In this document: in pieces, positions 3,401 to 54,791 of the stretch | How the letters are laid out: the number at the start of each line of letters is the position of its first letter | How positions within the stretch are numbered: the first letter of the stretch is position 1 | Sequence record: LR756504.1 | Strand: one strand, 5' to 3' | DNA length: 64,000 nucleotides | Notes under the pieces: generated by a model | What the model saw: the letters and a program-made list of their open reading frames with translations, nothing else | The model's database searches: none | Told to the model about the DNA's origin: nothing | Translations under genes and position numbers: made by a program

Positions 3401-4378
3401 ATGTCATTTATGAAACAAGATTATTACAACATTTTAGGTGTTGATAAAAACACTTCGCCAGAAGAATTAAAAGCAGCTTATAGAAAAAAAGCAAAAGAAC
3501 ATCATCCAGACAAAGGTGGTGATGCGGAACAATTTAAAATTATCAATTCTGCATATGAAACTCTCTCTGATCCACAAAAAAGGAGAGAATATGATAACCC
3601 GAATCAATTTTCAAATTTCCAAGGTTCTCCTTTCGGTCAAGAGTTTAATTTCGATTTCGATTCAATATTTAATCAATTTAATTTTGGTGGACATAGAAAA
3701 CAAGAATTTAGAGAAGATTTAGATATAAGATTAACTGTAGATATACCGTTTAAAACTATTTACCAAGATAAACCATTAGAAATAAAATACTATAAAAATA
3801 CACCATGTTCTAAATGTAATTATACAGGTGTTGAAGAAAGTGATGATTCTGCTGATTGTTTACATTGTGATGGTAAAGGACATAGTACAAAATTTGGAGG
3901 AAATAAAACAACTTGTAATTATTGTCATGGTTCAGGTAAAATTCATACAAAGGCATGTTCTCAATGTGATGGTAATAAAGTAGAATCTAAATTAGAAACT
4001 ATTACAATGGACAATGTATTTATATTAGGTGAAGAACCACAAAGGATGGCATATAGAGGTAGTGGACACTTTTCTAGATATTATCCTGGTAGAAGAGGTG
4101 ATTTAATAATTTTATTAAACCCTATAGTAGATGGAAAATATTTAAGACAAGGTGTTAATTTATTACACCAATTGGATATAGATTATAGAACAGCAATTGA
4201 AGGTGGTGAAATTGAGTATACGCATCTTGATGACAAAATTTATAAAATAAGAATTTCTGAAAAATCTAATAAAGGAACTAAACTAAAAATGACAGGAAAA
4301 GGATTATTACAAAGAGATAAAAAAACAAGAGGTGATTTAATAATTGAATTATCTATAATTATAAATTATGCAATTTAA
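3401..4378 (+). CDS. dnaJ: DnaJ (Hsp40) chaperone
   Basis: J-domain ([11 protein letters not shown] motif), G/F region, four CxxCxGxG-type zinc motifs, C-terminal GKG...RGDL substrate domain. Confidence 0.95.
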
Positions 4379-5028: not shown

Positions 5029-5391
5029 TTAATTATCCTTTAATATAATTAAATATTTTCTATTTGTAATAGGAGATATATTTTCTTTTATTGTCCAATT
5101 ATTATCCGATAATTTCATTTTAAATAATCTTAATCTTATATCACATAAAACATATAAACGAATTTCGGTATAGTTTACACTTTTAATTATATTTTTTATT
5201 TTTTTATAAAAATTTGGTTCAGGTTTTCCAATTTTATTAAATGAATAGGTGTCTGTATCAATATCATAATATGCAATATCTAAATCTACTGTTTTCTTAT
5301 CCCTTTCTTCTAAAATTATTTTATATTCTCCTATATAAAACACATTTTTATTGGAAGAATCGTAATTTTCAAATAATTTGATATATTTCAT
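5029..5391 (-). CDS. Hypothetical protein with N-terminal MKYIKLFEN tag
   Basis: ORF track; TTATATATA motif upstream. Confidence 0.65.
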   Translation of the reverse strand: MKYIKLFENYDSSNKNVFYIGEYKIILEERDKKTVDLDIAYYDIDTDTYSFNKIGKPEPNFYKKIKNIIKSVNYTEIRLYVLCDIRLRLFKMKLSDNNWTIKENISPITNRKYLIILKDN

Positions 5392-8753: not shown

Positions 8754-10457
8754 TTATGAAATAGAAATAGTAGTTATTGCCCCAGCATTGTCAATTGAAA
8801 TATACCATAACGTATTATCTGGACTTCTACCACTAATTACACTATCAGCTATTGGGTTATTATATGTTTGTGTAGCATCTGAATATACATTAAATGTGGA
8901 GTTAGAAATTGTACTATTAAAAGTTATATTTTTTACAGTATTATTAAATGCGATATTAGTACAAGTATTATTTATTATTAAATTTGTGCAATTTATTGCG
9001 AATTTACCAACCGTTACTGAACCTGATGTAGATACTGAAATATTATTACAACCTGTTGCAAATTCAGTAGATGAAATAATACCATCAATTATAATATCAT
9101 TACACCCTATATTAAATTCATTGTTAAATAATGTACCATAAGAAACAACACTTTTAGAATTCTTAATCTGTGAACAGTTATTAGATATTCTATTACTTAT
9201 TGCCCATAACATAAAGTTGTCGGTGCAATTATTACCAAGTGAATTATTAGATGAATTGTAAATAACATTATTGCTATTACTTGCGCCAAGTGTATTATTT
9301 TTTCCATATTGATTAATATGATTAGATGTAGAGAAATCGCCGATGGTGTTATAAGATGAAATCATATTTAAATAATTATTAGAGCAATTTGATTTTAATG
9401 TATTATATCTTGCCATATAACCAATGTAATTATTAATACCAGTTTTACCTATTGTATTACCGTGTGCCATACCACCAATAAAGAAATATGTGTTATTACT
9501 ATCTACGTATGTGTTGTTTGATGAGTTGATAATAAAATTATTACATCCATAATTTACTGTTGATAAATCTGGTGATATATTATCAACTTCATCAGATATT
9601 GTTCCATTAAAACAATTTTGTTCAATTTGTATATTAACACCCCTTTTAATTACAATATTATTATATGCTATTGATATATTCTTTTTAACATAACTATTTT
9701 TAACATTATTTTCAAATGTAAAATATTCAGTTGGAGTATTTGCAGCATAAACAGTACCCCCCAAAAAAGTAATTACTTGATCCCATGATAACATGTTTGC
9801 TAAATCGAGTTGTTCCCAATATTTAGAAAGTAAATCATCTGAAAATGTTCCACTTGTATGTGCTGTCCTACATCTATAAAGAACACTACTTTGGTTAACT
9901 ATTGTACCTATACCGTAAGGAGTTGATGTTACCCATGCAGTAAATAAACCTATAGTTATAGGGTATCTAACAAACTTAACAGTTCTAATATCATAATAAG
10001 CAAAGTTATTATTAACAGTATCGTGTCTAAATGTTATTTTACCATTTCTTGGTGTTGACGAATCTTCACAAAGAATATCCTGAAAATCATAATGAATTAA
10101 ATCAGTGGGGAATAATGTTGAATATGCTTGTTTATGAAAAGTATTTGTAGAAACAGATAGTACAAGTAAAGGCTCTGTAGTACCAGTTTTTATTGTGGTT
10201 GTGATAGGTTGTTGATATTTTGTTACATAATCACTTATTGAATAGAATTTACCCACTGATAGATTGCTGTTTGATACTAAAGTCGCTAAATTTGCATACG
10301 TTATAGCTTCAGTATTAATTAAATCATTTGAGTTAAGAATGGATGATATTTTACCATTTGTACCAAAAACTGGAATAGTACCCGAAGTACCATTAATGGT
10401 TTTTGAAATTAATTCTTCATTAACGTTATAATTACCAAAAGCTGATTTAAAAGACAT
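8754..10457 (-). CDS. Tail-fibre/structural protein with CBM-like insert and Asn-rich beta-helix repeats
   Basis: AWVTSTPYGIGTIV...YRCRTAHTS...YWEQL carbohydrate-binding-like module; repeated NxIGxxxxNN; TAATATATA motif upstream (10479-10486). Confidence 0.6.
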   Translation of the reverse strand: MSFKSAFGNYNVNEELISKTINGTSGTIPVFGTNGKISSILNSNDLINTEAITYANLATLVSNSNLSVGKFYSISDYVTKYQQPITTTIKTGTTEPLLVLSVSTNTFHKQAYSTLFPTDLIHYDFQDILCEDSSTPRNGKITFRHDTVNNNFAYYDIRTVKFVRYPITIGLFTAWVTSTPYGIGTIVNQSSVLYRCRTAHTSGTFSDDLLSKYWEQLDLANMLSWDQVITFLGGTVYAANTPTEYFTFENNVKNSYVKKNISIAYNNIVIKRGVNIQIEQNCFNGTISDEVDNISPDLSTVNYGCNNFIINSSNNTYVDSNNTYFFIGGMAHGNTIGKTGINNYIGYMARYNTLKSNCSNNYLNMISSYNTIGDFSTSNHINQYGKNNTLGASNSNNVIYNSSNNSLGNNCTDNFMLWAISNRISNNCSQIKNSKSVVSYGTLFNNEFNIGCNDIIIDGIISSTEFATGCNNISVSTSGSVTVGKFAINCTNLIINNTCTNIAFNNTVKNITFNSTISNSTFNVYSDATQTYNNPIADSVISGRSPDNTLWYISIDNAGAITTISIS

Positions 10458-10744: not shown

Positions 10745-11563
10745 TTATTTAATTACGTCTTTTCCTAATTCTATCATTCTTTTAAAAACTGCATCCTTAT
10801 CATTTGGTAAAGTACCATTTACAATTTCATCTTTCAACTTTTTCTTGATAATTCCGATTTCTCTACCTGGTTTTAGATTAAAATAGTCCATTATCTCTTG
10901 ACCAGAAACAGGTGGCTCAAATGTACGAACTTTATCGGCTTCTTCTAAAGCTATCATTTTAGATTTTAGTACATCAATACTTTTAATATTACTTTGTTTC
11001 CTCTCTTCATTCTTTGTTGTCATATCACATTTAGCGAAGAGTAGTAAATCATCCAAATCATCACCAATATCTAATTTAAATCTCCTAAGAGCAGAATCAG
11101 ATACATTAGGGATACATAATACTTTAACTTGACCATGTAAATTAATTAATTTCTTTACATAGTCTATCTTATCCATTGGTAAACTTAAACGTTTGAAAAT
11201 GTTATCAATCATTCTAGCACCAATTTCTTCGTGTAAATGGAATGTCCAACCTAAAGATTTATCATATCTTTTGGATTTAGCTTTTCCAATATCATGTAAT
11301 ATAGAAACACAGATTAACCAAGGGTTATCTGTCATATTTCTTGTATTTCTAACAACTTTTATAGTATGCCAAAAATTGTCTTTATGGCCATTATTACCCA
11401 CCCTTTCAACTCCCTTTAAAGCAGTTAATTCGGGTAATAGATAATCTAATACCCCCATTTCATTTAGTTTTTCTAAATCTTCCGCAGGAGTATTTGAATG
11501 TAAAATGTTCAAAAAAATCTTAGTTTCCTCTTTAAATGATTCAAATGTCATAAAATATTTCAT
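10745..11563 (-). CDS. HD-domain protein resembling the C-terminal half of CCA-adding enzyme/poly(A) polymerase (no nucleotidyltransferase head)
   Basis: YLLPELTALKGVE, HKDNFWHT, LHDIGK, TFHLHEEIGA, PPVSGQEIM...LKPGREIG; N-terminal MKYFMTFESF tag. Confidence 0.8.
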   Translation of the reverse strand: MKYFMTFESFKEETKIFLNILHSNTPAEDLEKLNEMGVLDYLLPELTALKGVERVGNNGHKDNFWHTIKVVRNTRNMTDNPWLICVSILHDIGKAKSKRYDKSLGWTFHLHEEIGARMIDNIFKRLSLPMDKIDYVKKLINLHGQVKVLCIPNVSDSALRRFKLDIGDDLDDLLLFAKCDMTTKNEERKQSNIKSIDVLKSKMIALEEADKVRTFEPPVSGQEIMDYFNLKPGREIGIIKKKLKDEIVNGTLPNDKDAVFKRMIELGKDVIK

Positions 11564-11591
11564 AAACTATATATACAAATTTACTAATTTT

Positions 11592-13010: not shown

Positions 13011-13523
13011 TTATTCGAGATTTTCTAATTTTTTTAACAATTTGGTAATCTTACCGAGCATACCACACTGCTTTAAACCTTCGTCTATTTTACATCTAAT
13101 AAACCTTTCAGGATAACATTTTAAAGGCATATCATCTAAAATATAGAAGTTTTCTATATTATTATCATTAATGTATTTAGTAATTTCAGTGTCTCTCTTC
13201 TCAGCCATATCTTCAAATAATTCAAGTTTTCCTGAATCAAGCTTTTTATGAAATATGAAAGGAGTATATTCTGTTGGAATATGACTTACCTTATTCCATA
13301 AAAATATTTCTTGAATTTCGGGAAGAGAAAAGTGGCTTCTCCAATCAGAAGTTAATACAATATTGGTAGGAGTTAATTTTAACGCCTCATTTAATATATT
13401 AACACACTTAGGATCAAATGGATATGTAGTTCCATTGAACCAATTCTTTTTACTCCTGCTTTGTCTAAATGACCAGCTAGTTGTTATCACATCATCGATA
13501 TCTAAAAATAGAACTATCATCAC
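13011..13523 (-). CDS. HAD phosphatase (Swiss-Army-knife RNA-repair HAD type)
   Basis: FLDIDDVI motif I, VLTSDWR motif II, YILDD motif IV. Confidence 0.75.
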   Translation of the reverse strand: MMIVLFLDIDDVITTSWSFRQSRSKKNWFNGTTYPFDPKCVNILNEALKLTPTNIVLTSDWRSHFSLPEIQEIFLWNKVSHIPTEYTPFIFHKKLDSGKLELFEDMAEKRDTEITKYINDNNIENFYILDDMPLKCYPERFIRCKIDEGLKQCGMLGKITKLLKKLENLE

Positions 13524-13639: not shown

Positions 13640-14104
13640 ATGAAAGTATTCGGAAAAGAAAGAAATTGTATAATTCATGATGAAAACAAAGTATGTGGAT
13701 TCTTTGGTGAATATCGCTTCTTATCTAATTATGATTGGTGCGAAATACATTATGATGGATTAGTGTATTCATCTACTGAGGCTGCTTATCAGGCTGCTAA
13801 ATCATTAGATAGAGAAACTCAAATTGAATATACAAGAATGGGTCCATCGGAGTCAAAAAAAATAGCATACAAATTACCTATAAGAGAAGATTGGTATGAT
13901 ATAAGACTTGATGTGATGTATGCGGTTATTAAAGATAAATTTACACGACACGAAGAATTGAAAACTAAATTACTTCAGACGGGTGATAAATATTTAGAGG
14001 AAACTAATTATTGGAAAGATGTTTTTTGGGGTGTGTATGATAGAAAAGGTGAGAACAATTTAGGAAAAATATTAATGCGAGTTAGAGAAGAAATTAAAAA
14101 ATAG
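13640..14104 (+). CDS. NADAR family protein (YbiA/RibX-like)
   Basis: FLSNY, EAAYQAAK, LLQTG...LEETNYWKDVFWG, GENNLGKILMRVR. Confidence 0.9.
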   Translation: MKVFGKERNCIIHDENKVCGFFGEYRFLSNYDWCEIHYDGLVYSSTEAAYQAAKSLDRETQIEYTRMGPSESKKIAYKLPIREDWYDIRLDVMYAVIKDKFTRHEELKTKLLQTGDKYLEETNYWKDVFWGVYDRKGENNLGKILMRVREEIKK

Positions 14105-14674: not shown

Positions 14675-15037
14675 ATGATACAAATTGATTTTATCCGAGA
14701 AAATAAAGATATGATAATCGAAGAATTAAATAAAAAACATTTTCGTAATGCAAAAAAATATGTGGAAATAATTTTAGAAACCGATGCTAAGAGAATGTCA
14801 ATTCAAAAAGAATTGGACGAATCTATATTAAGAATTAACATGAAATCAAATGAAATTGAAGTTTATTTAAGTAATGGTGAAATAGAGGCAGCAGAGGACA
14901 TTAAAAATAAATCTAATATATTAGGAAAGAAGATTAAAGAATTAATTAAAGAATTGAAAGATGTTGAAGAAAAACTTAATGATAAATTAGTTAAGCTTCC
15001 TAATATACCGCACACCGATGTTCCTGACATACATTGA
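14675..15037 (+). CDS. Stand-alone seryl-tRNA synthetase N-terminal coiled-coil (tRNA-binding arm); catalytic domain absent
   Basis: MIQIDFIREN...DAKRMSIQKELD...LPNIPHTDVP matches SerRS residues ~1-115 and stops at the domain boundary. Confidence 0.85.
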   Translation: MIQIDFIRENKDMIIEELNKKHFRNAKKYVEIILETDAKRMSIQKELDESILRINMKSNEIEVYLSNGEIEAAEDIKNKSNILGKKIKELIKELKDVEEKLNDKLVKLPNIPHTDVPDIH

Positions 15038-16461: not shown

Positions 16462-16541
16462 GCTCCCATGGTGGAATGGCAGACACGCTCGGCTTAAAAT
16501 CGAGTGCCTTGTGCATACAGGTTCAAGTCCTGTTGGGAGTA
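16462..16541 (+). tRNA. tRNA-Leu(UAA), long variable arm, no encoded CCA
   Basis: GCTCCCA/TGGGAGT acceptor, CTCGG-CTTAAAA-TCGAG anticodon arm, GGTTCAAGTCC T-arm. Confidence 0.92.
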
Positions 16542-16554
16542 CTAATTATCACAT

Positions 16555-16640
16555 GCCCTTGTGATGTAATGCAGCCATGAACGCCTTAGAAGCGTTTGCG
16601 AAGTAATAGTAGCGTGTAGGTTCGAGTCCTACCAAGGGTA
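16555..16640 (+). tRNA. tRNA-Leu(UAG), long variable arm
   Basis: GCCCTTG/CAAGGGT, AACGC-CTTAGAA-GCGTT, GGTTCGAGTCC. Confidence 0.92.
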
Positions 16641-16649
16641 CACAATAAT

Positions 16650-16738
16650 GGAGGGAATCTGGCTGGATGAAGAGCCAATCTTGAAAATTGGTAAATCGGT
16701 GATGAACTGGTTTGTGGGTTCGAGTCCCACTTCCTCCT
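16650..16738 (+). tRNA. tRNA-Ser(UGA)
   Basis: GGAGGGA/TTCCTCC, CCAAT-CTTGAAA-ATTGG, long variable arm, GGGTTCGAGTCCC. Confidence 0.9.
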
Positions 16739-16744
16739 CAAAAT

Positions 16745-16817
16745 GGTACTATGGCCGAGTGGATATAGGCGCACGTCTGCAAAACGTGATACATCAGTTC
16801 GAACCTGATTAGTACCT
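16745..16817 (+). tRNA. tRNA-Cys(GCA)
   Basis: GGTACTA/TAGTACC, CACGT-CTGCAAA-ACGTG, U73. Confidence 0.93.
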
Positions 16818-16824
16818 CAAAAAT

Positions 16825-16911
16825 GGAGAGTAGGCAAATATTGGTTTGTTGCGGCATCCTGCTAAGATGTTCCGTATAAAAGCGGTGAGGGTTCAATTCC
16901 CTTGCTCTCCT
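16825..16911 (+). tRNA. tRNA-Ser(GCU)
   Basis: GGAGAGT/GCTCTCC, GCATC-CTGCTAA-GATGT, long variable arm. Confidence 0.92.
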
Positions 16912-16990
16912 CAAATAAAGTTCTATTGTGTAAATATTATCACACTTAAACGTAGCCGAACTTTTTGATATATAATATCAAAAAAAAGCT

Positions 16991-17695
16991 ATGAGTTTAA
17001 AAAGTGAGAAAATATTAAAGTATGCTAAAAAAATTAGAGCGATTGAATTATTAGGTGGTTGTTGCATTGAATGTGGTGTTGATAATATACATAAATTATG
17101 TTTTCACCATATAAATAGAAATGATAAAAAATTTGATATTTCGGATAAATTAGGATTAAAGTGGAACAAAATAAAAGATGAAGTTATAAAATGTGAGTTA
17201 TTATGTTTAAATTGTCATACAGAAAAACATTATAATGAAATTTCTGATAAAAAAGATATAAAAAGAAGGAGTGAAAAAAAACTATTTATTTCAATAAAGG
17301 GTGATTCATGTGAATATTGTAATTATAATAAGTGTGATGCAACATTAGAATTTCATCATCATAATGATAATAAAAATTTCTCTATAGGGAAAAAAAGATT
17401 AACTAAAAATAATTTATTATTATTTATAGAAGAAATAAACAAGTGTACTTTATTATGTAAAAATTGCCATATTCATTTACATAAAGATAGTTTCTATGAT
17501 GATAATAAAGATGAAATAATAAAAAAGAAAAATGATTATATTGATTTAAATAAAATTGATTTAGATAAATTTTTTGAATTATATAATGGTGGGTATAAAC
17601 AAGTTGAAATATCAAAACTGTTAAATTGTTCAAAAAGTAGAATCTCAGAATTAGTTTCAAAATATTTTAAAGGGAAGAATACTCAAGTGATTTAA
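16991..17695 (+). CDS. HNH homing endonuclease (two tandem CxxC-HH-CxxCH units plus C-terminal HTH) inside the tRNA cluster
   Basis: CCIECG..LCFHH..LCLNCH and CEYCN..LEFHH..LCKNCH; VEISKLLNCSKSRIS HTH; stop codon lies in the next tRNA. Confidence 0.85.
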   Translation: MSLKSEKILKYAKKIRAIELLGGCCIECGVDNIHKLCFHHINRNDKKFDISDKLGLKWNKIKDEVIKCELLCLNCHTEKHYNEISDKKDIKRRSEKKLFISIKGDSCEYCNYNKCDATLEFHHHNDNKNFSIGKKRLTKNNLLLFIEEINKCTLLCKNCHIHLHKDSFYDDNKDEIIKKKNDYIDLNKIDLDKFFELYNGGYKQVEISKLLNCSKSRISELVSKYFKGKNTQVI

Positions 17696-17763
17696 GAGGA
17701 TACATTGGAAATGTATTAGATCGGGATTAACCTGGTGCGTGAGTTTGAATCTCACTTCTTCCA
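17673..17763 (+). tRNA. tRNA-Ser(GGA)
   Basis: GGAAGAA/TTCTTCC, ATACA-TTGGAAA-TGTAT, long variable arm, T-loop TTTGAAT (non-canonical). Confidence 0.85.
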
Positions 17764-17768
17764 CAAAT

Positions 17769-17842
17769 GGCTTAGTGATGTAATTGGTAAACGTGTTCGG
17801 TTCAAACCCGAAATTTTATAGGTTCGAGTCCTATCTAAGCTA
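17769..17842 (+). tRNA. tRNA with CAA anticodon (Leu), short variable loop
   Basis: GGCTTAG/CTAAGCT, TTCGG-TTCAAAC-CCGAA, 5-nt variable loop, A73. Confidence 0.85.
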
Positions 17843-17853
17843 CAATAATAAAT

Positions 17854-17928
17854 GCCATTGTGGTGGAATTGGTTATACACACTAGTCTAAGAAACTAGGA
17901 ATTGCAGGTTCGACTCCTGTCAATGGTA
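17854..17928 (+). tRNA. tRNA with AAG anticodon (Leu, A34), short variable loop
   Basis: GCCATTG/CAATGGT, CTAGT-CTAAGAA-ACTAG, 5-nt variable loop, A73. Confidence 0.88.
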
Positions 17929-17947
17929 CTAAAAAATATATATTTAT

Positions 17948-19105: not shown

Positions 19106-19687
19106 ATGAAAAAAATAAGCACATTATTTAAAAAGGATCCTAAAGATTTGGGTTTAGTAACTACTGAAGTTAGTCCTGAAAATGATTGGGTTATAAAAGG
19201 AGAAGGTATAGCAACTCGTAAATGGGATGGTATTGCTACTGCTATTATGGACGGTTGTTTATTTAAAAGGTATGATGTAAAAAAAGGAAGAACTGCTCCT
19301 ATTGGTGCTATTCCTTGTCAAGAACCTGATGAAATAACAGGACATCATCCACATTGGGTAAAATGTGAAAGAACAAATCCTGCCGATAAATATTTCTTTA
19401 TGGCATTTGATAGTTTAGAAGATAAATCTGAGGGAACATATGAATTAATTTCTGATAATTTTCAAGGTAGACATTCTAAAAAGAATCCTGAGAACATTAC
19501 AGGACATAAGCTTATTAAACATGGTGTTGAATCATTTGAATTGAATGATTTAAGCTTTGAAGCTATAAAAGCGTTTATATGCAATCCTGATAATGATGTT
19601 GAAGGTATTGTATTCCACCATAAGACTGATGGTAGAATGTGTAAAATTAAAAAATCTAATTTTGGAGTCCTTAGATATAAAATATAA
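19106..19687 (+). CDS. ATP-dependent RNA ligase-like protein (DUF5565/RLIG1-type)
   Basis: Motif I TRKWDG (KxDG), GHHPHWV, YELI, EGIVFH, KIKK at C-terminus; start moved to ATG 19106. Confidence 0.7.
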   Translation: MKKISTLFKKDPKDLGLVTTEVSPENDWVIKGEGIATRKWDGIATAIMDGCLFKRYDVKKGRTAPIGAIPCQEPDEITGHHPHWVKCERTNPADKYFFMAFDSLEDKSEGTYELISDNFQGRHSKKNPENITGHKLIKHGVESFELNDLSFEAIKAFICNPDNDVEGIVFHHKTDGRMCKIKKSNFGVLRYKI

Positions 19688-20044: not shown

Positions 20045-20344
20045 ATGGATTTATCTTTCGAAATGTTATATGATGGTATGGAGTTCTCTGCTCGAATAAA
20101 TGAAATACCTTGTGTTGGTAAAATAGCATTGTTCGATGGTGGTGTATATTTGTGTCAAAATGTAAAATCGGGGGCATATTGTGTTCGTAATAAAAGACAT
20201 GGATATGATTTTAGTTGGGCAATATTAACAAAGAATTGTTATAAGAAAACAATAGAACGTGCATTAAAACAAAATCATGTATCTGAGTTTAAAATTTTAA
20301 ATAGAAGAAAGAATAGAATAACTGAATTTTATAATAAAAAATAG
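20045..20344 (+). CDS. Paralog family A, copy 1
   Basis: LSFExLxDGxEFSA.IxxxPCxGK...LCQ...RHGY..SW; C-terminal RKNRITEF. Confidence 0.75.
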   Translation: MDLSFEMLYDGMEFSARINEIPCVGKIALFDGGVYLCQNVKSGAYCVRNKRHGYDFSWAILTKNCYKKTIERALKQNHVSEFKILNRRKNRITEFYNKK

Positions 20345-20345
20345 A

Positions 20346-20645
20346 ATGAATTTAACATTTGAGTCATTGCAAGATGGTATGGAATTTTCCGCACATATAG
20401 ATGGGACACCATGTGAAGGTAAACTTTGTATGTATGATAACCATGTCTTTTTATGTCAAGACAAGAAAGATGGTATTGATTGTAGACGTGACAGAAGACA
20501 TGGTTATCAATTTAGTTGGATAATTAAAGATCCATATAAAAAAACTACAACACTTGATCAAGCATTGAAGATACATGGTGTAACTGGATTTAAAATTCTG
20601 AATAAAAGAAAAGATAGAATAACTGACTTTTATAATCAAAACTAA
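20346..20645 (+). CDS. Paralog family A, copy 2
   Basis: Same motif set; RKDRITDF. Confidence 0.75.
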   Translation: MNLTFESLQDGMEFSAHIDGTPCEGKLCMYDNHVFLCQDKKDGIDCRRDRRHGYQFSWIIKDPYKKTTTLDQALKIHGVTGFKILNKRKDRITDFYNQN

Positions 20646-20650
20646 TTGAA

Positions 20651-20950
20651 ATGGAATTATCTTTTGAATCATTAACAGATGGTATGGAATTTTCTGCTAA
20701 CATAGATGGAATACCATGTGTTGGTAAAATTGCTGTATTTAGTGGTTTTGTATATTTATGTCAAAATAAAAAATCTGGCGCACTTTGTGGATACGATAAA
20801 AGACATGGTTATAATAGTAGTTGGATAATTAGAAATCCTGCTAAACATGTTCCATCACTATCGGTATCGTTCGCTGAAAACAGAGTAACTGAATTTAAAA
20901 TTCTGAATAAAAGAAAAGATAGAATAACTGAATTTTATAATCAACATTAA
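20651..20950 (+). CDS. Paralog family A, copy 3
   Basis: Same motif set; RKDRITEF. Confidence 0.75.
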   Translation: MELSFESLTDGMEFSANIDGIPCVGKIAVFSGFVYLCQNKKSGALCGYDKRHGYNSSWIIRNPAKHVPSLSVSFAENRVTEFKILNKRKDRITEFYNQH

Positions 20951-20951
20951 A

Positions 20952-21257
20952 ATGGATTTATCTTTCGAATTGTTATATGATGGTATAGAATATTCTGCTA
21001 ACATTGTTGGAATACCTTGTGTAGGTAAAGTTTCTATGTTTGATAACAGTGTTTATTTATGTCAAGATAAAACAGAAGGTTCTGACTGTGGTGTTGATAG
21101 AAGACATGGTTATGATTACAGTTGGGTGATTGTAGAAAGTTTGGACGATACTCCATTAGAAGAAGCATTGGATTTAAATGATGTTAAAGATTTTAAAATA
21201 ATAAATAGAGTAGCTGATAAAAGAAAAGAAAGAATAAATAAATTAAATTTTGACTAA
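20952..21257 (+). CDS. Paralog family A, copy 4
   Basis: Same motif set; RKERINKL. Confidence 0.75.
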   Translation: MDLSFELLYDGIEYSANIVGIPCVGKVSMFDNSVYLCQDKTEGSDCGVDRRHGYDYSWVIVESLDDTPLEEALDLNDVKDFKIINRVADKRKERINKLNFD

Positions 21258-21266
21258 TATCTATTA

Positions 21267-22856
21267 TTATTTCAAATAGTCAATTAACGAAGAAAGTATT
21301 TCTTGTTTATTTTCTATACCATCAATTTGTTTTACAAAATTTATAAATCTTTTTTTATCATCATCACTTGTAAATTTAATATGTTGATTTCCAATAGAAC
21401 CATTATCATAAACTCTAAATGTTGTAGTATAATTATTATCAACAGTTTCAAAAAAATCATTTATTGAATTATATACCAATGTATTATAATCATCAAATAG
21501 TTTACTGTTTATAAAAATTATATTTAAGAATCCTGCTGATGCTACATAGGTACTAACACCAGAAGTATCAATTACGCATGTTATAGGATTCTCGTATTTA
21601 CCTACTAGTAAATTAAAAACTCCCCATTTTTCTTTACTTTTATTGAGATAATAAATAAAATTATTTGCTTCTGAATACACATCATCCTCTTCTTCGTCTT
21701 CATCATCAAAGTCAACATTTTCTCTAATATCTAATGGTTTATCAAAACGAAATGCATTTAGAGGGATATTATTTTCAGTTAAGAATGTTATAACATTTTT
21801 TATACTATTGGTATCGGTAAATTTTCTATAGATTACATCAGATGTTATATTAACGTATATTCTATATTTAGATTTTTTCCTTTGGTATTTACCCAATCTA
21901 ACATAATCATTATTCTTTGCAATATCTAAAAATTCTTCTCTAATCATAGTAAATTTAATGCTTGACGGAGTTCCCCAAGTACTCGTTTTATTATATTTTA
22001 GACTATGTGGTTCAATAATACATCTACAATTACCTGTTTTTTTATTCCATGTATGTATAATTCCATATTTTTCTTTACTTTTTTCTAAGTCTTCGAAAAA
22101 TATTTCGTCTTCTTCTTCCTCGCCATCATCATCGTAATCTAAATATTCATTTAATGTCATAATTTTTTTCAATTCATCATCAAGTTCAATAGTCTTAAAT
22201 GTCTTTTCGCATTCTTTTACTAACTCTTTAATATTATTGTATTTTTTAGATATAACCATAATACCTTCTAATTCTATAGATGGTCCATCAACAGATAAAG
22301 TTTCAATTTCTTTTATATCTTTATTAAGAACAATTGTGTAATAATCACTATCTTGAATTAAATGATACCATATCTTTCTACTATTATCATTAGTGGCATA
22401 AGAAGAACTTCTAGCATATCCAATTTCATTTATAAGAGCTTTGTACATCTTATACCCTAAACCAATTCCAAATAATTTATCGGATAATCCTATTGCATGT
22501 ATTCTATTTAATGGATGTTCAACTTGAAAAGCTAATTTTAATTTAAGTCTATTTTGTGTAATTTCTTTATATTCATTTACTAATTTAAGTAAATGTATGT
22601 TCTCTTTTACTGATACTGACCATTCATCAGTTTTGTAAACTTTTCTATCTAATACAGCATATAAATCATCTACAGAAATGTATTTTAAAATTGTTCTAAT
22701 TTCGGTTAATAATAATTCACCTTTATCATCAGTTTGGGATTCTGGTTTATTTTTTGTAAGTTCTTTATTTTGTATTAGATAAAAGTCCTTATTAGAGTCT
22801 ATCCATTGTTTAGACATCTCTTTTTCAAATAAATAGAATTTCTTTAAAAATTTCAT
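21267..22856 (-). CDS. Multidomain protein with GNAT-like segment and N-terminal tag
   Basis: RIHAIG...LFGIGLGYKMY...RKIWYHL; MKFLKKFYLFE; TAATATATA at 22861-22868. Confidence 0.55.
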   Translation of the reverse strand: MKFLKKFYLFEKEMSKQWIDSNKDFYLIQNKELTKNKPESQTDDKGELLLTEIRTILKYISVDDLYAVLDRKVYKTDEWSVSVKENIHLLKLVNEYKEITQNRLKLKLAFQVEHPLNRIHAIGLSDKLFGIGLGYKMYKALINEIGYARSSSYATNDNSRKIWYHLIQDSDYYTIVLNKDIKEIETLSVDGPSIELEGIMVISKKYNNIKELVKECEKTFKTIELDDELKKIMTLNEYLDYDDDGEEEEDEIFFEDLEKSKEKYGIIHTWNKKTGNCRCIIEPHSLKYNKTSTWGTPSSIKFTMIREEFLDIAKNNDYVRLGKYQRKKSKYRIYVNITSDVIYRKFTDTNSIKNVITFLTENNIPLNAFRFDKPLDIRENVDFDDEDEEEDDVYSEANNFIYYLNKSKEKWGVFNLLVGKYENPITCVIDTSGVSTYVASAGFLNIIFINSKLFDDYNTLVYNSINDFFETVDNNYTTTFRVYDNGSIGNQHIKFTSDDDKKRFINFVKQIDGIENKQEILSSLIDYLK

Positions 22857-30581: not shown

Positions 30582-31205
30582 TTAATCATTAATATTTATT
30601 TCTATAGCAGTATTTTTAATTAACGCATTAATATTTTCTATTATATTAATGTATAATTTTTTATAAAAATCTATATCACCAAAATCGGTAAAGTTTAAAT
30701 TATTATTGTAAAAGTAATCAGGAAATTCACTATTTTTATAAGATTTTACAAATTCATTAATATTCGGTAATGATACAGAAACAATATATTGTTTTATATT
30801 ATCTATCTCATTGGTTAAAACTGCCTCTTCTTGTTCATCTGCTTTTTTCCCAGTTTTTTTCAATATTCTTTTCCCTATTTTATCATCAAAATAATCAACT
30901 GATATAACTTTATATTTTTGTGATATTTTATTTAAATCTAAATCCATTCTTACTAATAATTCTTGATCCTCAAGTCCCATATTTTTTATATTATTTGGTG
31001 TATTTAAAAATTTGTTTCTTGTTAATGATATGAATTTCATTCTTTTTGAAATGTGTTCTTTTTTATACAAATTAGGAAAGTCGTTATAAAAATATCTGTA
31101 TGCTTTTAATTTATTTTCTTCTAAAATGTAATATAAATTTATCATTTCTGTAAAATGATAAACAATATTACTATTAAAATTTTCAAATATTTTTATGTAT
31201 TTCAT
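30582..31205 (-). CDS. ADP-ribosyltransferase-like protein with MKYIKIFENF tag
   Basis: VYHFT, ISLTR, VRMDLD, DEQEE; paralog of 51057..51740. Confidence 0.5.
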   Translation of the reverse strand: MKYIKIFENFNSNIVYHFTEMINLYYILEENKLKAYRYFYNDFPNLYKKEHISKRMKFISLTRNKFLNTPNNIKNMGLEDQELLVRMDLDLNKISQKYKVISVDYFDDKIGKRILKKTGKKADEQEEAVLTNEIDNIKQYIVSVSLPNINEFVKSYKNSEFPDYFYNNNLNFTDFGDIDFYKKLYINIIENINALIKNTAIEININD

Positions 31206-31211: not shown

Positions 31212-31889
31212 TCAATTTATTATTTTTACTTTTGTATCTAAATCACAATCACCTGTATCTAATAATTTCCAAAGTTCGACATAATTAAGTTTCGATCTTC
31301 CATAAGCATTAGAATTTATATTTTGTACCGCGATATCATATTCATAACCTTGAGAATCATTTAATGTGATATTAACGTTATTAACTATATAAGTATTTTC
31401 ACTATTGTATTTATAGAATTGAATTTTCTTACCAATTAAAGACATAGCATATTCTTCTGGTATGGTATAACATTTTGGTAATTTTTTTATATTCTCGCTA
31501 TATAATGGGAATGCTTCTTTTAATTTAGATATAAAATCATACCATTCATCTTCTTTAAATTGAATATCATTTAAATTGAGCTTTGCTCCAAAATATGTAC
31601 TTATATTTAATTGTAAATCATATTTATTAACATTATCGTAAAATTCATCAATATTTTTGAAATGATTGTGTTCTAAATTTAAAACAGTAGATTCACATCC
31701 ATTAATTCTAGCTGTTATATTACCATCATTTTCTGAAAAAGAAATATACCTAATACGAAAAGTATTTCCTTGAATATAAACAACTGGTGATTTTCTAATT
31801 GAATTGAAAAAGTTATCAATTTCTATATAAAATTCATCATCTTCTTCATTTTCATCATCAAAGTCTTCAAATAGCTTTAAATATTTCAT
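31212..31889 (-). CDS. Hypothetical protein with MKYLKLFEDF tag
   Basis: TAATATATA at 31895-31902. Confidence 0.65.
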   Translation of the reverse strand: MKYLKLFEDFDDENEEDDEFYIEIDNFFNSIRKSPVVYIQGNTFRIRYISFSENDGNITARINGCESTVLNLEHNHFKNIDEFYDNVNKYDLQLNISTYFGAKLNLNDIQFKEDEWYDFISKLKEAFPLYSENIKKLPKCYTIPEEYAMSLIGKKIQFYKYNSENTYIVNNVNITLNDSQGYEYDIAVQNINSNAYGRSKLNYVELWKLLDTGDCDLDTKVKIIN

Positions 31890-32770: not shown

Positions 32771-33178
32771 TTATAATATCATTTTATTAAATTCGTAATC
32801 AGAATCAATAGAACCAAATTTATTATAATCATCGGTTAATTCATCACCAATATTTATATCTACTTTAGCTACAGTAACTCCCATTTCATCATCATTTAAG
32901 TTAACACTTTCACAATTAGGATCATCCGAATGATTAAAAAATCTTGCGTTATCCACACACATCACATATAAACCTTTATACATGAAGCAATATTTAATGA
33001 GAAATTCCTTATATAATGGATTGGAAACAGATTGATATTCTTCTTCTGTATATAATTTATCGATAAATGTATCGATACGCCATACAATAGTTCCTTTAGG
33101 TATAAATTCGGCGGCGAATAACCCTATACCAGCACTTTCTATTGGACTTTCACTGAGATATGTTTTTACTTTTAGCAT
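32771..33178 (-). CDS. SET-domain protein methyltransferase
   Basis: GIGLFAAEFIPKG, RFFNHSDDPN, ELTDDY. Confidence 0.9.
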   Translation of the reverse strand: MLKVKTYLSESPIESAGIGLFAAEFIPKGTIVWRIDTFIDKLYTEEEYQSVSNPLYKEFLIKYCFMYKGLYVMCVDNARFFNHSDDPNCESVNLNDDEMGVTVAKVDINIGDELTDDYNKFGSIDSDYEFNKMIL

Positions 33179-42587: not shown

Positions 42588-42974
42588 ATGAAGTATTTAA
42601 AATTATACGAAGATTTTTCAGATGAATGGGATGATGAACCAGAAGAAGATGATACTGATGTAGAAACATGTTTTAACTATAATGATGATGAAAAGACTCT
42701 TGGTGTAGATATAAAAAGTCTAAAAGCTTATTTCGAAGAAAAGGGTATTAATATCGTATATTCTATTTTTGATATGACAGATTATGATTATGGTATTCAT
42801 TGTGAGTATGAACTTAAAATATCCATAGAATTTAATAATATAGTAAACTATCTCCCACAAAAACAATCATTAATAGATGACTTTCGAAGATTGCCTTTTG
42901 TAGAAATCACTGATGGGAATAAGTACTTCTTTATTGTTAAATTTAAAGAAGGTATATTCGTTGAGGAAAATTAA
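42588..42974 (+). CDS. Hypothetical protein with MKYLKLYEDF tag
   Basis: ORF track; co-directional behind the hydrolase. Confidence 0.6.
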   Translation: MKYLKLYEDFSDEWDDEPEEDDTDVETCFNYNDDEKTLGVDIKSLKAYFEEKGINIVYSIFDMTDYDYGIHCEYELKISIEFNNIVNYLPQKQSLIDDFRRLPFVEITDGNKYFFIVKFKEGIFVEEN

Positions 42975-44118: not shown

Positions 44119-44661
44119 TCATGACTTTTTACCTGTACCATGAATAGTAAATTTTTCTTCATGTTCTGTACCAGGTGCAACTATAACATCAAAAGTAATG
44201 TCTTTATTGACTAAGCTTTCTACAGAAGAATTCATCTTTCCAACTTCGGATTCCATGTTTACCATTACTGAACCACCTTCGTTAATTGTTTTAGACTCAT
44301 TTAGATGGTTTAAATCTTCTAATGATAATTTACCTTTAAATATGATTTCTTTAGCACCTTTCTTCTTATCAAATGAGTGTTTTTCTAAACCAATACTTTC
44401 TAAAAAATCTATTATAGGTTCTACTTTCTCTAAAGTAAATCTTGCTGTACCGCTACCATGAAATTCAATACCAAACTTATTGGAAATAATGCTTTTTAAT
44501 TTAAAATTAGGCTTATTGTCAAATGATTGTTCCATAAAAACATCATTACCAAAAATATTAATATGTATCCATATAGGCTCTTGTAAAGTACCCGTTATAT
44601 CTCTTTTCCATTGATTTTTTAAGTTATCAATGAAACCTTCGAATGTTTTCATATTTTTCAT
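44119..44661 (-). CDS. Hypothetical protein with MKNMKTFEGF tag
   Basis: TAATATATA at 44679-44686; start moved to ATG 44661. Confidence 0.6.
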   Translation of the reverse strand: MKNMKTFEGFIDNLKNQWKRDITGTLQEPIWIHINIFGNDVFMEQSFDNKPNFKLKSIISNKFGIEFHGSGTARFTLEKVEPIIDFLESIGLEKHSFDKKKGAKEIIFKGKLSLEDLNHLNESKTINEGGSVMVNMESEVGKMNSSVESLVNKDITFDVIVAPGTEHEEKFTIHGTGKKS

Positions 44662-49633: not shown

Positions 49634-49966
49634 TTAAGATCTATGTGATAAATCGAATATTGCATGTTTAATTCCTCCTTCTACCGCTTCTGTGTAAGAA
49701 GGATATCCACCTTTATGATCATTTTTTGTAATGATACCATTACTCATTGTATCTTTAAAAACATAAAAATAATTTATTTTACCATCGCTATAAGTGGAAA
49801 CTACACTAATAGTTAATCTATATTGATCTGAAATATACGTTAATTGTTCTATTAAAGACATAGTCGATAATTTCTCTTTTAATTGTTCAATTTTAAATTC
49901 GTGAGATTTATCATTATCAAAGAGATTATCAAATGCTTTATTTTCAAATTTTTTAATATGTTTCAT
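49634..49966 (-). CDS. Hypothetical protein with MKHIKKFEN tag
   Basis: ORF track; TATATA motif upstream. Confidence 0.6.
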   Translation of the reverse strand: MKHIKKFENKAFDNLFDNDKSHEFKIEQLKEKLSTMSLIEQLTYISDQYRLTISVVSTYSDGKINYFYVFKDTMSNGIITKNDHKGGYPSYTEAVEGGIKHAIFDLSHRS

Positions 49967-49992: not shown

Positions 49993-50196
49993 TTAACTAT
50001 CTTTTACAGAATTTTCACACCACGTTTTAAAATCATCTACAGCATTAGCAGAACCAATTCCTATCTCTTTATAATAAAGTAGATTGCTCATATTATCAGC
50101 CTTCTTAAATTTGTTAGGTATAGGATTCCATGAATATGGTGAGTTTAATGCTAAAACCTCTTCGTGTGAATCGTTAAATTTTTTCAAATGCTTCAT
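49993..50196 (-). CDS. Hypothetical protein with MKHLKKF tag
   Basis: ORF track; ATTATATATA upstream. Confidence 0.55.
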   Translation of the reverse strand: MKHLKKFNDSHEEVLALNSPYSWNPIPNKFKKADNMSNLLYYKEIGIGSANAVDDFKTWCENSVKDS

Positions 50197-51761: not shown

Positions 51762-52316
51762 CTATACAAAACCATACTTACACTTAACTAATATCGTACC
51801 ATCATAATCCATCACAGCTTTAATAAAACTAAAAGGCATAAAAATCCTACCATTAGCATTTTCTACAATATCATTGAAAATATTATTACATAATCTATCG
51901 TAAAATTTACCATTCTCTTCTAAAGTATTTTTATTTATAGTTTCTCTATATGTATTATTCACCTGAATAGATTCTAAAAAATCTTCATAGTCCAAATCAT
52001 TATCTAAGTTCTCTATCGTAAACTTTCTAACAATTCCTCTATCGTAGTTATGTCTAATTTGAATACCATGCTTAATTAGCTTACTCAATACTAACCATGT
52101 TAAATGTGTACCATCAAAAGTTTTGTATGTTAAAGAAGAATCTTTGTATATAGTCGTTGAATTATCTAAAGAACTTATATACATAGATGCTTGCTCCATA
52201 CATATAGAGAAATTGGTAATATCTTCTATACTTGTAGTATTTGCTAAAGGTGTCCATTTATTAATTATATTACCAATAATATTTTTATCAGCTAATATAT
52301 GTCTCATTGCGCTCAT
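51762..52316 (-). CDS. Hypothetical protein, paralog of 39012..39548
   Basis: LSKLIKHGIQIRHNYD, KCKYGFV. Confidence 0.65.
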   Translation of the reverse strand: MSAMRHILADKNIIGNIINKWTPLANTTSIEDITNFSICMEQASMYISSLDNSTTIYKDSSLTYKTFDGTHLTWLVLSKLIKHGIQIRHNYDRGIVRKFTIENLDNDLDYEDFLESIQVNNTYRETINKNTLEENGKFYDRLCNNIFNDIVENANGRIFMPFSFIKAVMDYDGTILVKCKYGFV

Positions 52317-54252: not shown

Positions 54253-54266
54253 ATTCCCAATTCCTA

Positions 54267-54695: not shown

Positions 54696-54791
54696 ATTAA
54701 TAATTCATATTATCATTATAGCGGAATTATATGGGAAAGTTTTATTTAAACTATTAAGAATATTTATGTATAATAAGTAAACTATAAATAC

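What the first reader, a model, noticed from the sequence alone, without database searches (positions are those of the whole stretch)
10745..11563. Headless CCA-enzyme: HD domain only, carrying the capsid-targeting-like tag
Seen: sequence follows the body/HD/tail of HD-type CCA-adding enzymes but begins after the nucleotidyltransferase head, which is replaced by MKYFMTFESFKEE. Established: the E. coli CCA enzyme HD domain has 2',3'-cyclic phosphodiesterase/phosphatase activity that heals tRNA 3' ends. None of the eight tRNAs here encodes CCA. Inference: an injected tRNA end-healing enzyme, or an HD hydrolase for nucleotide alarm signals.
Basis: partly seen in the sequence, partly recalled or inferred. 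Interest (0 to 1): 0.65.

Follow-up and report, generated by a model that had tools for sequence, protein, structure and literature searches.

The report
Headless CCA-enzyme HD module in huge phage
A huge soil phage of Bacteroidota carries a conserved gene that is only the back half (phosphatase plus tRNA-anchoring part) of a bacterial tRNA CCA-adding enzyme, sits among RNA-repair genes, and most likely cleans damaged tRNA ends; the claim that it is injected with the DNA is untested.

Summary
ORF 10745-11563 (-), 272 aa, matches only positions 216-452 of 466 of the HD-type CCA enzyme model. About 205 residues (head and most of the neck) are missing and about 8 new residues (MKYFMTFE) stand in front. 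It is not a wreck. Six headless phage copies form one clade beside full-length Bacteroidota enzymes. dN/dS is 0.11, all HD metal residues are invariant, and the tRNA-anchoring tail is as conserved as the HD core. The window's record is only part of the 636-kb phage LR756504, which encodes a separate, complete 388-aa non-HD CCA-type enzyme elsewhere. Neighbours are RNA-repair and translation genes: HAD_SAK_2 phosphatase, RNA ligase, polynucleotide-kinase-like protein, eight CCA-less tRNAs, and RtcB in a relative. Best reading: a stand-alone, tRNA-directed 2',3'-cyclic-phosphate/phosphate esterase that heals tRNA ends (0.55). The N-terminal tag is real. It is strictly N-terminal, sits on about 25 unrelated proteins here, and occurs at 130 or more sites in other AT-rich viral contigs, several of them huge phages. 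The HD protein is a weak member, and three of six orthologues lack the tag. Capsid targeting or injection is only an analogy with T4. The nucleotide-alarm reading is weakened by a separate SpoT-type hydrolase in the genome.

The parts
10745..11563 (-). Gene for the 272-aa headless CCA-enzyme homologue (neck remnant + HD body + tail)
   Evidence: ORF. Pfam, NCBIfam and PHROG matches cover only the C-terminal half of the CCA enzyme models. AF2 model has pLDDT 86.5; the best folds are Aquifex A-adding enzyme 3wfr/3wfo, TMq 0.57-0.59.
11534..11563 (-). Codons 1-10, MKYFMTFESF: weak copy of the shared N-terminal decapeptide; residues 1-8 have no counterpart in bacterial CCA enzymes
   Evidence: Alignment A1. 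PSSM score 9.2 bits, rank 27 of 557 N-termini, above all non-members and all 1475 internal Met-decapeptides. pLDDT 45, so probably flexible.
11414..11533 (-). Residues 11-50: last helices of the neck (PolyA_pol_RNAbd positions 31-62 of 64)
   Evidence: helices H12-21, H26-35 and H39-47 are modelled with pLDDT 87-97.
11009..11413 (-). Residues 51-185: HD phosphohydrolase core with H60, H66, H90-D91, H109, H111, E112 and D180 invariant
   Evidence: Invariant columns in alignments A1 and A3 of 13 and 61 sequences. 43 of 57 bacterial-invariant columns are kept.
10748..11008 (-). Residues 186-272: linker helix and tail domain (the tRNA elbow anchor in class II enzymes)
   Evidence: PF13735 match at 167-261. 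The tail (residues 214-272) is 50% identical to bacterial enzymes, and 11 of 16 bacterial-invariant columns are kept in all five phage copies. The role of the tail is taken from PMC3925840.
11567..11583 (-). Promoter-like upstream elements: TAAATTTG (Bacteroidota -7 box pattern TAnnTTTG, 11576-11583) followed by TATATATAG (11567-11575)
   Evidence: Sequence. TAnnTTTG stands upstream of all five phage orthologues. TATATA within 20 nt upstream is enriched at tagged genes, 10 of 18 against 42 of 539, p 5e-7. That these act as promoters is inferred.
13011..13520 (-). Context: HAD_SAK_2 phosphatase (RNA-repair 'Swiss army knife' HAD family)
   Evidence: Pfam PF18143, E 1.5e-20. Also lies near the orthologue in L017.
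19106..19687 (+). Context: compact RNA ligase
   Evidence: phrog_14301 'RNA ligase', full length, E 5.9e-62. Pfam RLIG1, E 2.9e-6.
16462..17929 (+). Context: eight tRNA genes (Leu x4, Ser x3, Cys), none with an encoded CCA, interrupted by an HNH endonuclease gene at 16991-17695
14675..15037 (+). Context: stand-alone N-terminal tRNA-binding arm of seryl-tRNA synthetase
   Evidence: Pfam Seryl_tRNA_N, positions 1-108 of 108, E 4.7e-16. Syntenic in L017 and L018.
13640..14104 (+). Context: NADAR domain protein
   Evidence: Pfam PF08719, E 3.5e-23. A NADAR gene lies next to RtcB near the orthologue in L019.

Best explanation
The gene encodes a stand-alone, tRNA-directed HD phosphoesterase. An ancestor of a clade of huge Bacteroidota phages took a Bacteroidota-type HD-containing CCA-adding enzyme and lost the head and most of the neck. 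What remains is the HD body and the tail, which in class II enzymes hold the acceptor/T-arm and the tRNA elbow. The protein can no longer add nucleotides. It most likely binds tRNA through the body and tail and uses the HD metal site to hydrolyse 2',3'-cyclic phosphate and 2'/3'-phosphate ends left by tRNA-cleaving host defences or by spontaneous damage. That yields hydroxyl ends, which the phage's own RNA ligase, its kinase-like and HAD partners, and its separate 388-aa CCA-type enzyme (or the host's) can finish. Shown here: homology and domain limits, intact catalytic and tail residues, purifying selection, one ancestral truncation, and the RNA-repair neighbourhood. Inferred: enzyme activity, tRNA as substrate, and cooperation with the neighbours.
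For: The fold matches the tRNA-bound Aquifex A-adding enzyme. All HD residues are invariant across 61 sequences. The tail is as conserved as the HD core. dN/dS is 0.11 at dS 0.47 against P0001 and 0.07-0.41 against the others. The six headless phage copies form one clade (SH-aLRT 97), all cut at the same place. The neighbourhood holds HAD_SAK_2 1.4 kb away, an RNA ligase 7.5 kb away, eight CCA-less tRNAs, a SerRS tRNA-binding arm and NADAR. A polynucleotide-kinase-like protein and a GGQ release-factor half lie 15 kb upstream. Relatives keep this context: HAD_SAK_2 and Seryl_tRNA_N in L017, RtcB and NADAR in L019. A separate complete CCA-type enzyme is present in LR756504 and LR756502. Literature: the E. 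coli CCA enzyme's HD domain removes 2',3'-cyclic phosphate (Yakunin 2004, cited in PMC6961547). The M. tuberculosis enzyme, which the authors describe as carrying a C-terminal HDIG-type HD domain, has HD-dependent phosphohydrolase activity that does not need the transferase site (PMC10673834). Body and tail recognise the acceptor and T helices, and the tail anchors the elbow (PMC3925840). Jumbo phages use stand-alone SAK-HAD and sometimes HD-like phosphatases in RNA repair (PMC7824862).
Against: There is no biochemical evidence for this protein or any headless relative. In full-length enzymes the tRNA 3' end goes to the head-neck pocket, and nobody has shown how it reaches the HD site, so the geometry of a headless enzyme on tRNA is unknown. 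The repair genes are near but not in one operon: + strand genes separate the HD gene from HAD_SAK_2, and the gene directly downstream is a fibre-like protein. HAD_SAK_2 and the RtcB of relatives could make an HD esterase redundant. The gene is rare: four close relatives in the protein search, and the targeted IMG/VR scan found only one further, identical copy.
Confidence: 0.55

Rival explanations
1. The protein is an HD hydrolase for small nucleotide signals (2',3'-cNMPs, cyclic oligonucleotides, alarmones) made by host defence systems, so it is a counter-defence enzyme rather than an RNA repair enzyme.
For: The HD site is intact. [quoted passage not shown] Jumbo phages are proposed to degrade such signals (PMC7824862). 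NADAR or PARG genes lie nearby.
Against: The tail and neck remnant, which serve tRNA binding in the parent enzymes, are conserved as strictly as the HD core. The genome already has a dedicated SpoT/Mesh1-type HD_4 hydrolase at G000:272947-273534. To my knowledge (from memory, not searched here) no anti-signal enzyme derives from a CCA enzyme.
Confidence: 0.12
2. It removes the 3'-pyrophosphate that toxSAS/CapRel-type defence enzymes put on the tRNA CCA end. This is a special case of tRNA end healing aimed at one defence.
For: toxSAS enzymes pyrophosphorylate the tRNA 3' CCA, and HD-fold SAH enzymes reverse this (bioRxiv 10.1101/2021.04.30.441581). This protein joins an HD site to a tRNA top-half binding module.
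Against: The known reversing enzymes are RelA/SpoT-type HD_4 hydrolases, and the phage has one of those separately. No toxSAS link is seen in the data. This is pure inference.
Confidence: 0.08
3. It is a non-catalytic tRNA binder or a modulator of the host CCA enzyme, for example a decoy that shields tRNA ends or a dominant-negative partner of the 45-48% identical host enzyme.
For: The body and tail are retained. The protein is closely similar to Bacteroidota host-type enzymes.
Against: Every HD metal ligand is invariant over 46-90% sequence divergence, which argues for catalysis. There is no evidence of an interaction; I ran no complex prediction because I do not claim binding.
Confidence: 0.07
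4. It is a decaying remnant or a split piece of a CCA-adding gene without a function of its own.
For: Short bacterial look-alikes exist (P0049, P0073, P0016), but each is a frameshift split with the head ORF directly upstream.
Against: dN/dS is 0.11. The same truncation point occurs in six diverged phage copies. No head ORF is adjacent, and the gene has its own promoter-like motifs. The phage's other nucleotidyltransferase is complete with its own body and tail.
Confidence: 0.02

Closest known systems
HD-type class II CCA-adding enzymes (Bacteroidota/actinobacterial TIGR02692 type; E. coli Cca, PRK10885 'multifunctional CCA addition/repair protein')
   Same: Homologous over the whole C-terminal half: last neck helices, HD body with all metal ligands, and tail. 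It is 45-48% identical to Flavobacteriia enzymes. The HD activity of E. coli and M. tuberculosis enzymes is the model for the proposed chemistry.
   Different: It lacks the Pol-beta head and neck motif D, so it cannot add CCA. It scores 133 bits against a family cut-off of 439. It is a free-standing 272-aa protein with 8 new N-terminal residues, and it is encoded by a phage that has a second, complete non-HD CCA-type enzyme.
Aquifex aeolicus A-adding enzyme (PDB 3WFO-3WFS)
   Same: Best sequence match (E 3e-14) and best fold match (TMq 0.57-0.59, rmsd 2.4-2.9 over about 220 columns) among solved structures. These include tRNA complexes that show what body and tail do.
   Different: Only residues of about 313-496 of that enzyme are matched, at 21% identity. 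The Aquifex enzyme is a transferase.
Phage and bacterial RNA end-healing enzymes (T4 Pnkp; stand-alone SAK-HAD phosphatases and HD-like phosphatases noted in jumbo phages by Iyer et al. 2021; bacterial HD-Pnk, recalled from memory)
   Same: Same proposed task (clearing 2',3'-cyclic or 3'-phosphate ends before ligation) and the same kind of neighbourhood: kinase, HAD, ligase, tRNAs, CCA enzyme.
   Different: The esterase module has a different origin: it was cut from a CCA enzyme and carries a tRNA-anchoring tail. It is not fused to a kinase. Its activity is untested.
T4 internal proteins with the capsid targeting sequence MKTYQEFIAE
   Same: A leader of about 10 residues on otherwise unrelated proteins. 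It starts with MK, holds aromatic residues and a Glu, and the phages carry a gp21-like protease domain (weak hits).
   Different: The sequence resemblance is loose. Tagged proteins here range from pI 4.1 to 9.2, whereas the T4 proteins are highly basic. There are about 25 per partial genome. There is no proteomic or cleavage evidence. The tag is missing from half of the HD orthologues.

Membership tests
Class II CCA-adding enzyme (tRNA nucleotidyltransferase) | Pol-beta-type head domain with the catalytic carboxylates (PF01743) | tested here: not met
   Pfam finds no PolyA_pol match. The alignment starts at about column 206 of the full-length enzymes. An in-frame stop lies one codon upstream and a divergent gene starts 83 nt away.
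Class II CCA-adding enzyme (tRNA nucleotidyltransferase) | Neck motif D (DDPLRMMRAIRF in the bacterial relatives), which selects CTP/ATP | tested here: not met
   The motif lies in columns before the first aligned residue of the phage protein.
Class II CCA-adding enzyme (tRNA nucleotidyltransferase) | Whole-protein score above the curated family cut-off | tested here: not met
   TIGR02692 gives 133.4 bits against 438.8; PRK10885 gives 41 against 451.
Class II CCA-adding enzyme (tRNA nucleotidyltransferase) | Helical body and tail domains that bind the acceptor/T-arm and elbow of tRNA | tested here: met
   PF13735 matches at 167-261. The fold match to 3wfr/3wfo covers body and tail. The tail is 50% identical to bacterial enzymes. 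tRNA binding itself was not tested.
HD-domain metal-dependent phosphohydrolases (PF01966) | H...HD...D metal-binding signature and a score above the gathering threshold | tested here: met
   HD scores 35.9 bits against a cut-off of 22. H66, H90-D91, H109/H111/E112 and D180 are invariant in 61 sequences.
HD-domain metal-dependent phosphohydrolases (PF01966) | Metal-dependent phosphoesterase activity | not testable with these tools
   Activity is known only for the parent enzymes of E. coli and M. tuberculosis.
Phage RNA repair (healing and sealing) systems | Co-occurrence with a 5' kinase, a 3' phosphatase and an RNA ligase in the same genome region | tested here: met
   HAD_SAK_2 at 13011-13520, RNA ligase at 19106-19687, and a polynucleotide-kinase-like protein at G000:189303-189791. 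RtcB lies near the orthologue in L019. The genes are near each other but not in one operon.
T4-type capsid-targeted internal proteins | Short shared N-terminal leader on unrelated proteins | tested here: met
   19 regex hits in G000: 18 at residue 1 and the last at residue 15 of its ORF, probably the true start. The bodies are unrelated by blastp. At least 130 sites occur in IMG/VR, 121 of them with no in-frame ATG upstream. The HD protein is a weak member.
T4-type capsid-targeted internal proteins | Leader removed by the prohead protease, and the protein present in virions and ejected | not testable with these tools
   There are only weak Peptidase_S77-like hits in LR756504, LR756502 and three other tag-bearing phages. 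The phage is uncultivated, and only a DNA run holds the region.
T4-type capsid-targeted internal proteins | Highly basic cargo proteins | tested here: not met
   The pI of tagged proteins in the window runs from 4.1 to 9.2, and the genome-wide set is more acidic than other proteins. The T4 proteins are described as highly basic in PMC8442874.

The most novel reading that the evidence does not exclude
The N-terminal decapeptide (consensus MKY[LI]K[LT]FE[DN][FY]) may be a sorting signal, most plausibly a capsid-targeting signal cleaved by the gp21-like prohead protease. A clade of huge Bacteroidota phages would then use it to load about 25 unrelated enzymes into the virion: kinases, SET, ankyrin and GNAT proteins, and this tRNA end-healing HD module. 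tRNA repair would thus arrive together with the DNA. This would be a general, portable protein-delivery tag outside the T4 group, and the first injected tRNA repair enzyme.
Probability: 0.15. Interest if true: 0.85.

Novelty: new variant of a known kind. Interest (0 to 1): 0.5.

Why it matters
CCA-adding enzymes with an HD domain are thought to combine repair chemistry and CCA synthesis in one protein. Here a phage lineage has kept only the repair and tRNA-holding half for a long time and encodes the synthesis activity in a different, unrelated-type gene. That gives a natural separation-of-function construct. It could show what the HD domain of CCA enzymes really does on tRNA, a question still answered mostly with model substrates. 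It also adds an end-healing module of new origin to the phage RNA-repair toolkit that counters tRNA-cleaving defences. Separately, the shared N-terminal decapeptide on many unrelated proteins of huge phages was not found in the literature searched. It could be a usable targeting or expression tag.

Tried and rejected
1. A search for a head domain (PF01743) in the window's own genome record found nothing. This was misleading. The record (348 kb, labelled complete with inverted repeats) is only part of LR756504 (636 kb), which does hold a complete 388-aa CCA-type enzyme outside the record.

2. The 'Bacteriophage sp.' hits MT837203, MT835510, MT835611 and MT836608 are full-length enzymes (about 500-640-aa open frames). 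Two of them lie on high-GC actinobacterial-like DNA. They are not headless phage genes.

3. LR756501/3 (735 kb) carries a 1233-aa fusion with a deaminase and a full CCA-HD enzyme, so it is not headless.

4. The short bacterial hits P0049, P0073 and P0016 are frameshift splits.

5. The IMG/VR related-loci scan found only an identical copy.

6. Pfam on ten tagged proteins of the window found no function.

7. A sigma-70 promoter and terminator scan was uninformative: 53 sites against 45 expected, and no terminators.

8. No paper in the library holds the tag sequences.

9. Only one run holds the region, a DNA run from soil that is probably the source of the assembly. No RNA run holds it, so I did not use read laying.

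10. I did not run the large representative-protein search, because the protein was not left open. I did not run complex prediction, because I claim no binding.

11. A split-enzyme model (head supplied in trans) is rejected because the other phage enzyme has its own body and tail.

Full report
**What is there**

The minus-strand ORF 10745-11563 encodes 272 aa beginning MKYFMTFESFKEE. Family and structure searches all match only the back half of CCA-type enzymes:
- Pfam finds an HD domain (66-144, above threshold), tRNA_NucTran2_2 (167-261) and a weak match to the last half of the neck RNA-binding domain (17-48).
- NCBIfam's HD-type CCA enzyme model TIGR02692 matches at E 8.6e-39, but only over model positions 216-452 of 466 and far below the family cut-off. 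The E. coli-type 'CCA addition/repair' model matches positions 184-377 of 409.
- PHROGs gives 'tRNA nucleotidyltransferase', positions 183-376 of 392.
- The best solved relative is the Aquifex A-adding enzyme, residues 313-496.
- An AlphaFold model (pLDDT 86.5) again matches those structures best, with TMq 0.57-0.59 and rmsd 2.4-2.9 over about 220 columns. Residues 1-10 are unconfident at pLDDT 45.

The closest cellular relatives are full-length 470-476-aa CCA enzymes of Flavobacteriia, 45-48% identical over 92% of the query. In the alignment the phage protein starts at about column 206, after neck motif DDPLRMMRAIRF. Only MKYFMTFE has no counterpart. An in-frame stop lies one codon upstream and a divergent gene starts 83 nt away, so no head can be hidden by a wrong start or another code. 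About 205 residues (head plus most of the neck) are gone and about 8 are new. What remains is neck remnant plus HD body plus tail.

**It is a maintained gene, not a wreck**

- Close headless relatives exist in metagenomes: P0001-P0004, 264-275 aa, 68-90% identity.
- The 642-kb phage LR756502 has a 46%-identical headless copy.
- All six start within a few residues of the same point.
- They form one clade (SH-aLRT 97) beside the full-length Bacteroidota enzymes. The LR756502 branch is long, so I treat a single origin as likely rather than proven.
- dN/dS is 0.11 against P0001 at unsaturated dS 0.47, and 0.07-0.41 for the other pairs.
- H60, H66, H90-D91, H109, H111, E112 and D180 are invariant in 61 sequences.
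- The tail (residues 214-272) is as conserved against bacterial enzymes (50% identity) as the HD core (48%). In the tail, 11 of 16 bacterial-invariant columns are kept in all five phage copies.
- Short bacterial look-alikes are frameshift splits with the head ORF directly upstream. Among the hits I inspected, a free-standing headless form is therefore peculiar to these phages.

**Whose genome, and where is CCA addition**

The window lies in a 348-kb virus record. The gene is 100% identical to one in LR756504, one of the 636/642-kb 'Mahaphage' genomes predicted to infect Bacteroidetes (PMC7162821). Matching coordinates show that the 348-kb record is only part of that genome.

The head-domain search in the record was empty. 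LR756504, however, has a complete 388-aa nucleotidyltransferase with head, neck, body and tail. It covers the B. subtilis-type CCA model at positions 13-385 of 396 and lacks an HD domain. LR756502 has a 393-aa one. The 735-kb phages instead carry a 1233-aa fusion of a deaminase with a full CCA-HD enzyme.

So these phages hold the transferase and the HD/tail module as two separate genes of different ancestry. The eight tRNA genes in the window (Leu x4, Ser x3, Cys) indeed lack an encoded CCA, but they do not depend on this gene for it.

**Neighbourhood**

Within about 25 kb lie:
- a HAD_SAK_2 phosphatase (13011-13520, E 1.5e-20);
- a NADAR protein;
- the isolated tRNA-binding arm of SerRS;
- the tRNA cluster;
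- a full-length phage-type RNA ligase (19106-19687, phrog_14301, E 6e-62);
- just upstream of the window, a polynucleotide-kinase-like P-loop protein and the GGQ half of release factor 1.

Relatives keep the theme. HAD_SAK_2, PARG and the SerRS arm lie near P0002, and RtcB and NADAR lie near P0004. This matches the RNA-repair sets described for jumbo phages, including stand-alone SAK-HAD and occasional HD-like phosphatases together with CCA enzymes (PMC7824862).

The gene directly downstream is different: a small zinc-ribbon-like protein, then a 567-aa protein. The N-terminal 45-60 residues of that protein are conserved in relatives while the rest varies, a fibre-like pattern (inference).

**Most likely mechanism**

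Established from the literature:
- The HD domain of the E. coli CCA enzyme removes 2',3'-cyclic phosphates (Yakunin 2004, cited in PMC6961547).
- The M. tuberculosis CCA enzyme, which the authors describe as carrying a C-terminal HDIG-type HD domain, has HD-dependent phosphohydrolase activity that survives inactivation of the transferase site (PMC10673834).
- Body and tail of class II enzymes recognise the acceptor and T helices, and the tail anchors the elbow (PMC3925840).

Inference: the phage protein binds the top half of tRNA through body and tail and uses the HD site to turn cyclic-phosphate or phosphate ends into hydroxyl ends. The RNA ligase, the kinase and HAD partners and the CCA-type enzyme then complete the repair. 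I put this at 0.55. The weak points are that no activity is shown, that it is unknown how an RNA end reaches the HD site, and that the repair genes are neighbours rather than one operon.

**Rivals**

- A hydrolase for free nucleotide signals is possible (0.12). It does not explain the strict conservation of the tail, and the genome already has a SpoT/Mesh1-type HD_4 hydrolase.
- Removal of toxSAS-added pyrophosphate from the CCA end is an attractive special case, but nothing here points to it (0.08).
- A non-catalytic binder or modulator of the host enzyme is unlikely given the invariant metal ligands (0.07).
- A pseudogene or a split enzyme is contradicted by the data (0.02).

**The tag**

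- A motif MK[YH][LIF]K.[FY]E-like occurs 19 times in ORFs of the record: 18 times at residue 1 and once at residue 15 of its ORF, probably the true start. It never occurs deeper inside a protein.
- The bodies of the tagged proteins are unrelated.
- The matching DNA pattern occurs 12, 16 and 16 times in the record, LR756504 and LR756502. It is absent from the 735-kb phage, and a reversed control gives none.
- It occurs 5-24 times in each of five other large IMG/VR virus records of 183-640 kb.
- A stricter 10-codon pattern hits at least 130 sites in IMG/VR. At 121 of them no in-frame ATG lies upstream. My rough estimate of the chance expectation is about 2.
- Synonymous codons vary freely, so the constraint is on the peptide.
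- Tagged proteins elsewhere carry SET, ankyrin, GNAT, P-loop kinase, polynucleotide-kinase and other domains.
- In this genome tagged genes are enriched for TATATA within 20 nt upstream (p 5e-7).

The HD protein is a weak but significant member: 9.2 bits, rank 27 of 557, above every non-member and every one of 1475 internal Met-decapeptides. However, P0002, P0004 and the LR756502 copy lack the tag, with in-frame stops just upstream. The tag is therefore optional for the enzyme.

The likeness to the T4 capsid targeting sequence MKTYQEFIAE (PMC8442874) is one of architecture, not of sequence. Weak gp21-like protease hits exist. The cargo proteins are not basic, and no expression or virion data can be had. 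'Injected' is thus an open hypothesis (about 0.15), not a finding.

**Verdict**

This is a real, conserved, phage-specific derivative of a CCA-adding enzyme. It is best read as a tRNA-directed end-healing esterase within an RNA-repair toolkit: a new variant of a known kind, of moderate interest. The tag is the more unusual element and deserves its own study.

Noticed in passing
window 5029-5391(-), 21267-22856(-), 30582-31205(-), 31212-31889(-), 42588-42974(+), 44119-44661(-), 49634-49966(-), 49993-50196(-), 51057-51740(-), 57567-57815(-); also IMG/VR loci L027-L143: A strictly N-terminal decapeptide (consensus MKY[LI]K[LT]FE[DN][FY], often followed by an acidic stretch) sits on about 25 otherwise unrelated proteins of this phage. 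It also occurs at 130 or more sites in AT-rich viral contigs, some of them records of 183-640 kb, on SET, ankyrin, GNAT, kinase and unknown bodies. No paper in the library contains these sequences.
   Followed up: partly
window 11567-11575 and upstream of many tagged genes; also about 20-25 nt upstream of the 567-aa gene (start 10457) and its homologues in L019, L020 and L023: An (A)TATATA(G/C/A) element lies 4-12 nt before the ATG of tagged genes (10 of 18 against 42 of 539 other genes). It may be a phage promoter class giving very short or no leaders. It also stands before a fibre-like gene.
   Followed up: partly
window 11576-11583 and L017, L019, L020, L002 upstream regions: A perfect Bacteroidota -7 promoter pattern TAnnTTTG lies 12-25 nt upstream of the ATG in all five phage orthologues. 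This agrees with a Bacteroidota host and host-polymerase transcription.
   Followed up: no
whole record G000 versus LR756504: The 348-kb IMG/VR record, labelled complete with inverted terminal repeats, is only part of the 636-kb genome LR756504 (G000 304834 = LR756504 46870). Absences in the record are therefore not absences in the phage.
   Followed up: yes
window 14675-15037(+): A 120-aa protein consists only of the N-terminal tRNA-binding coiled-coil arm of seryl-tRNA synthetase. It lies next to a tRNA cluster rich in Ser and Leu (long-variable-arm) tRNAs and is syntenic in relatives.
   Followed up: partly
G000:190537-191040 (L010:2574-3077), 3 kb before the window start: A 167-aa protein equals the C-terminal GGQ half of release factor 1 (model positions 172-332 of 347) without the codon-reading part. 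Together with the SerRS arm and the headless CCA enzyme, it is the third 'cut-out domain' of a translation enzyme in this region. Next to it lies a 162-aa polynucleotide-kinase-like protein.
   Followed up: partly
G000:272947-273534 (L012:1342-1929, -): A 195-aa RelA/SpoT-type HD_4 hydrolase (small-alarmone-hydrolase-like), a candidate counter to alarmone or toxSAS defences.
   Followed up: partly
L005:73-3774 (LR756501, 735-kb phage): A 1233-aa fusion protein has a cytidine/dCMP-type deaminase domain near the N-terminus and a full CCA-HD enzyme at the C-terminus. Its first residues (..KFKLFEYN) resemble the tag.
   Followed up: no
window 16991-17695(+): An HNH homing-endonuclease-like gene is inserted in the middle of the tRNA cluster, between tRNA-Ser(gct) and tRNA-Ser(gga).
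   Followed up: no
window 20045-21257(+) and 52313-57546(-): Two tandem arrays of small paralogues: four genes of about 99 aa (M.LSFE.L.DGMEFSA...) and eight genes of about 141 aa (..FF.TYN.II..KL.NGDY..).
   Followed up: no
window 8754-10457(-) and homologues in L019, L020, L023: The 567-aa protein two genes downstream of the HD gene keeps its first 45-60 residues across relatives while the rest diverges. A K1-lyase-type tailspike-like gene follows it in L019. It looks like a receptor-binding fibre with a weak CBM_5_12 hit.
   Followed up: partly
window 32771-33178(-), 13640-14104(+), 3401-4378(+): The same region also encodes a SET-domain protein, a NADAR protein and a full DnaJ chaperone.
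   Followed up: no
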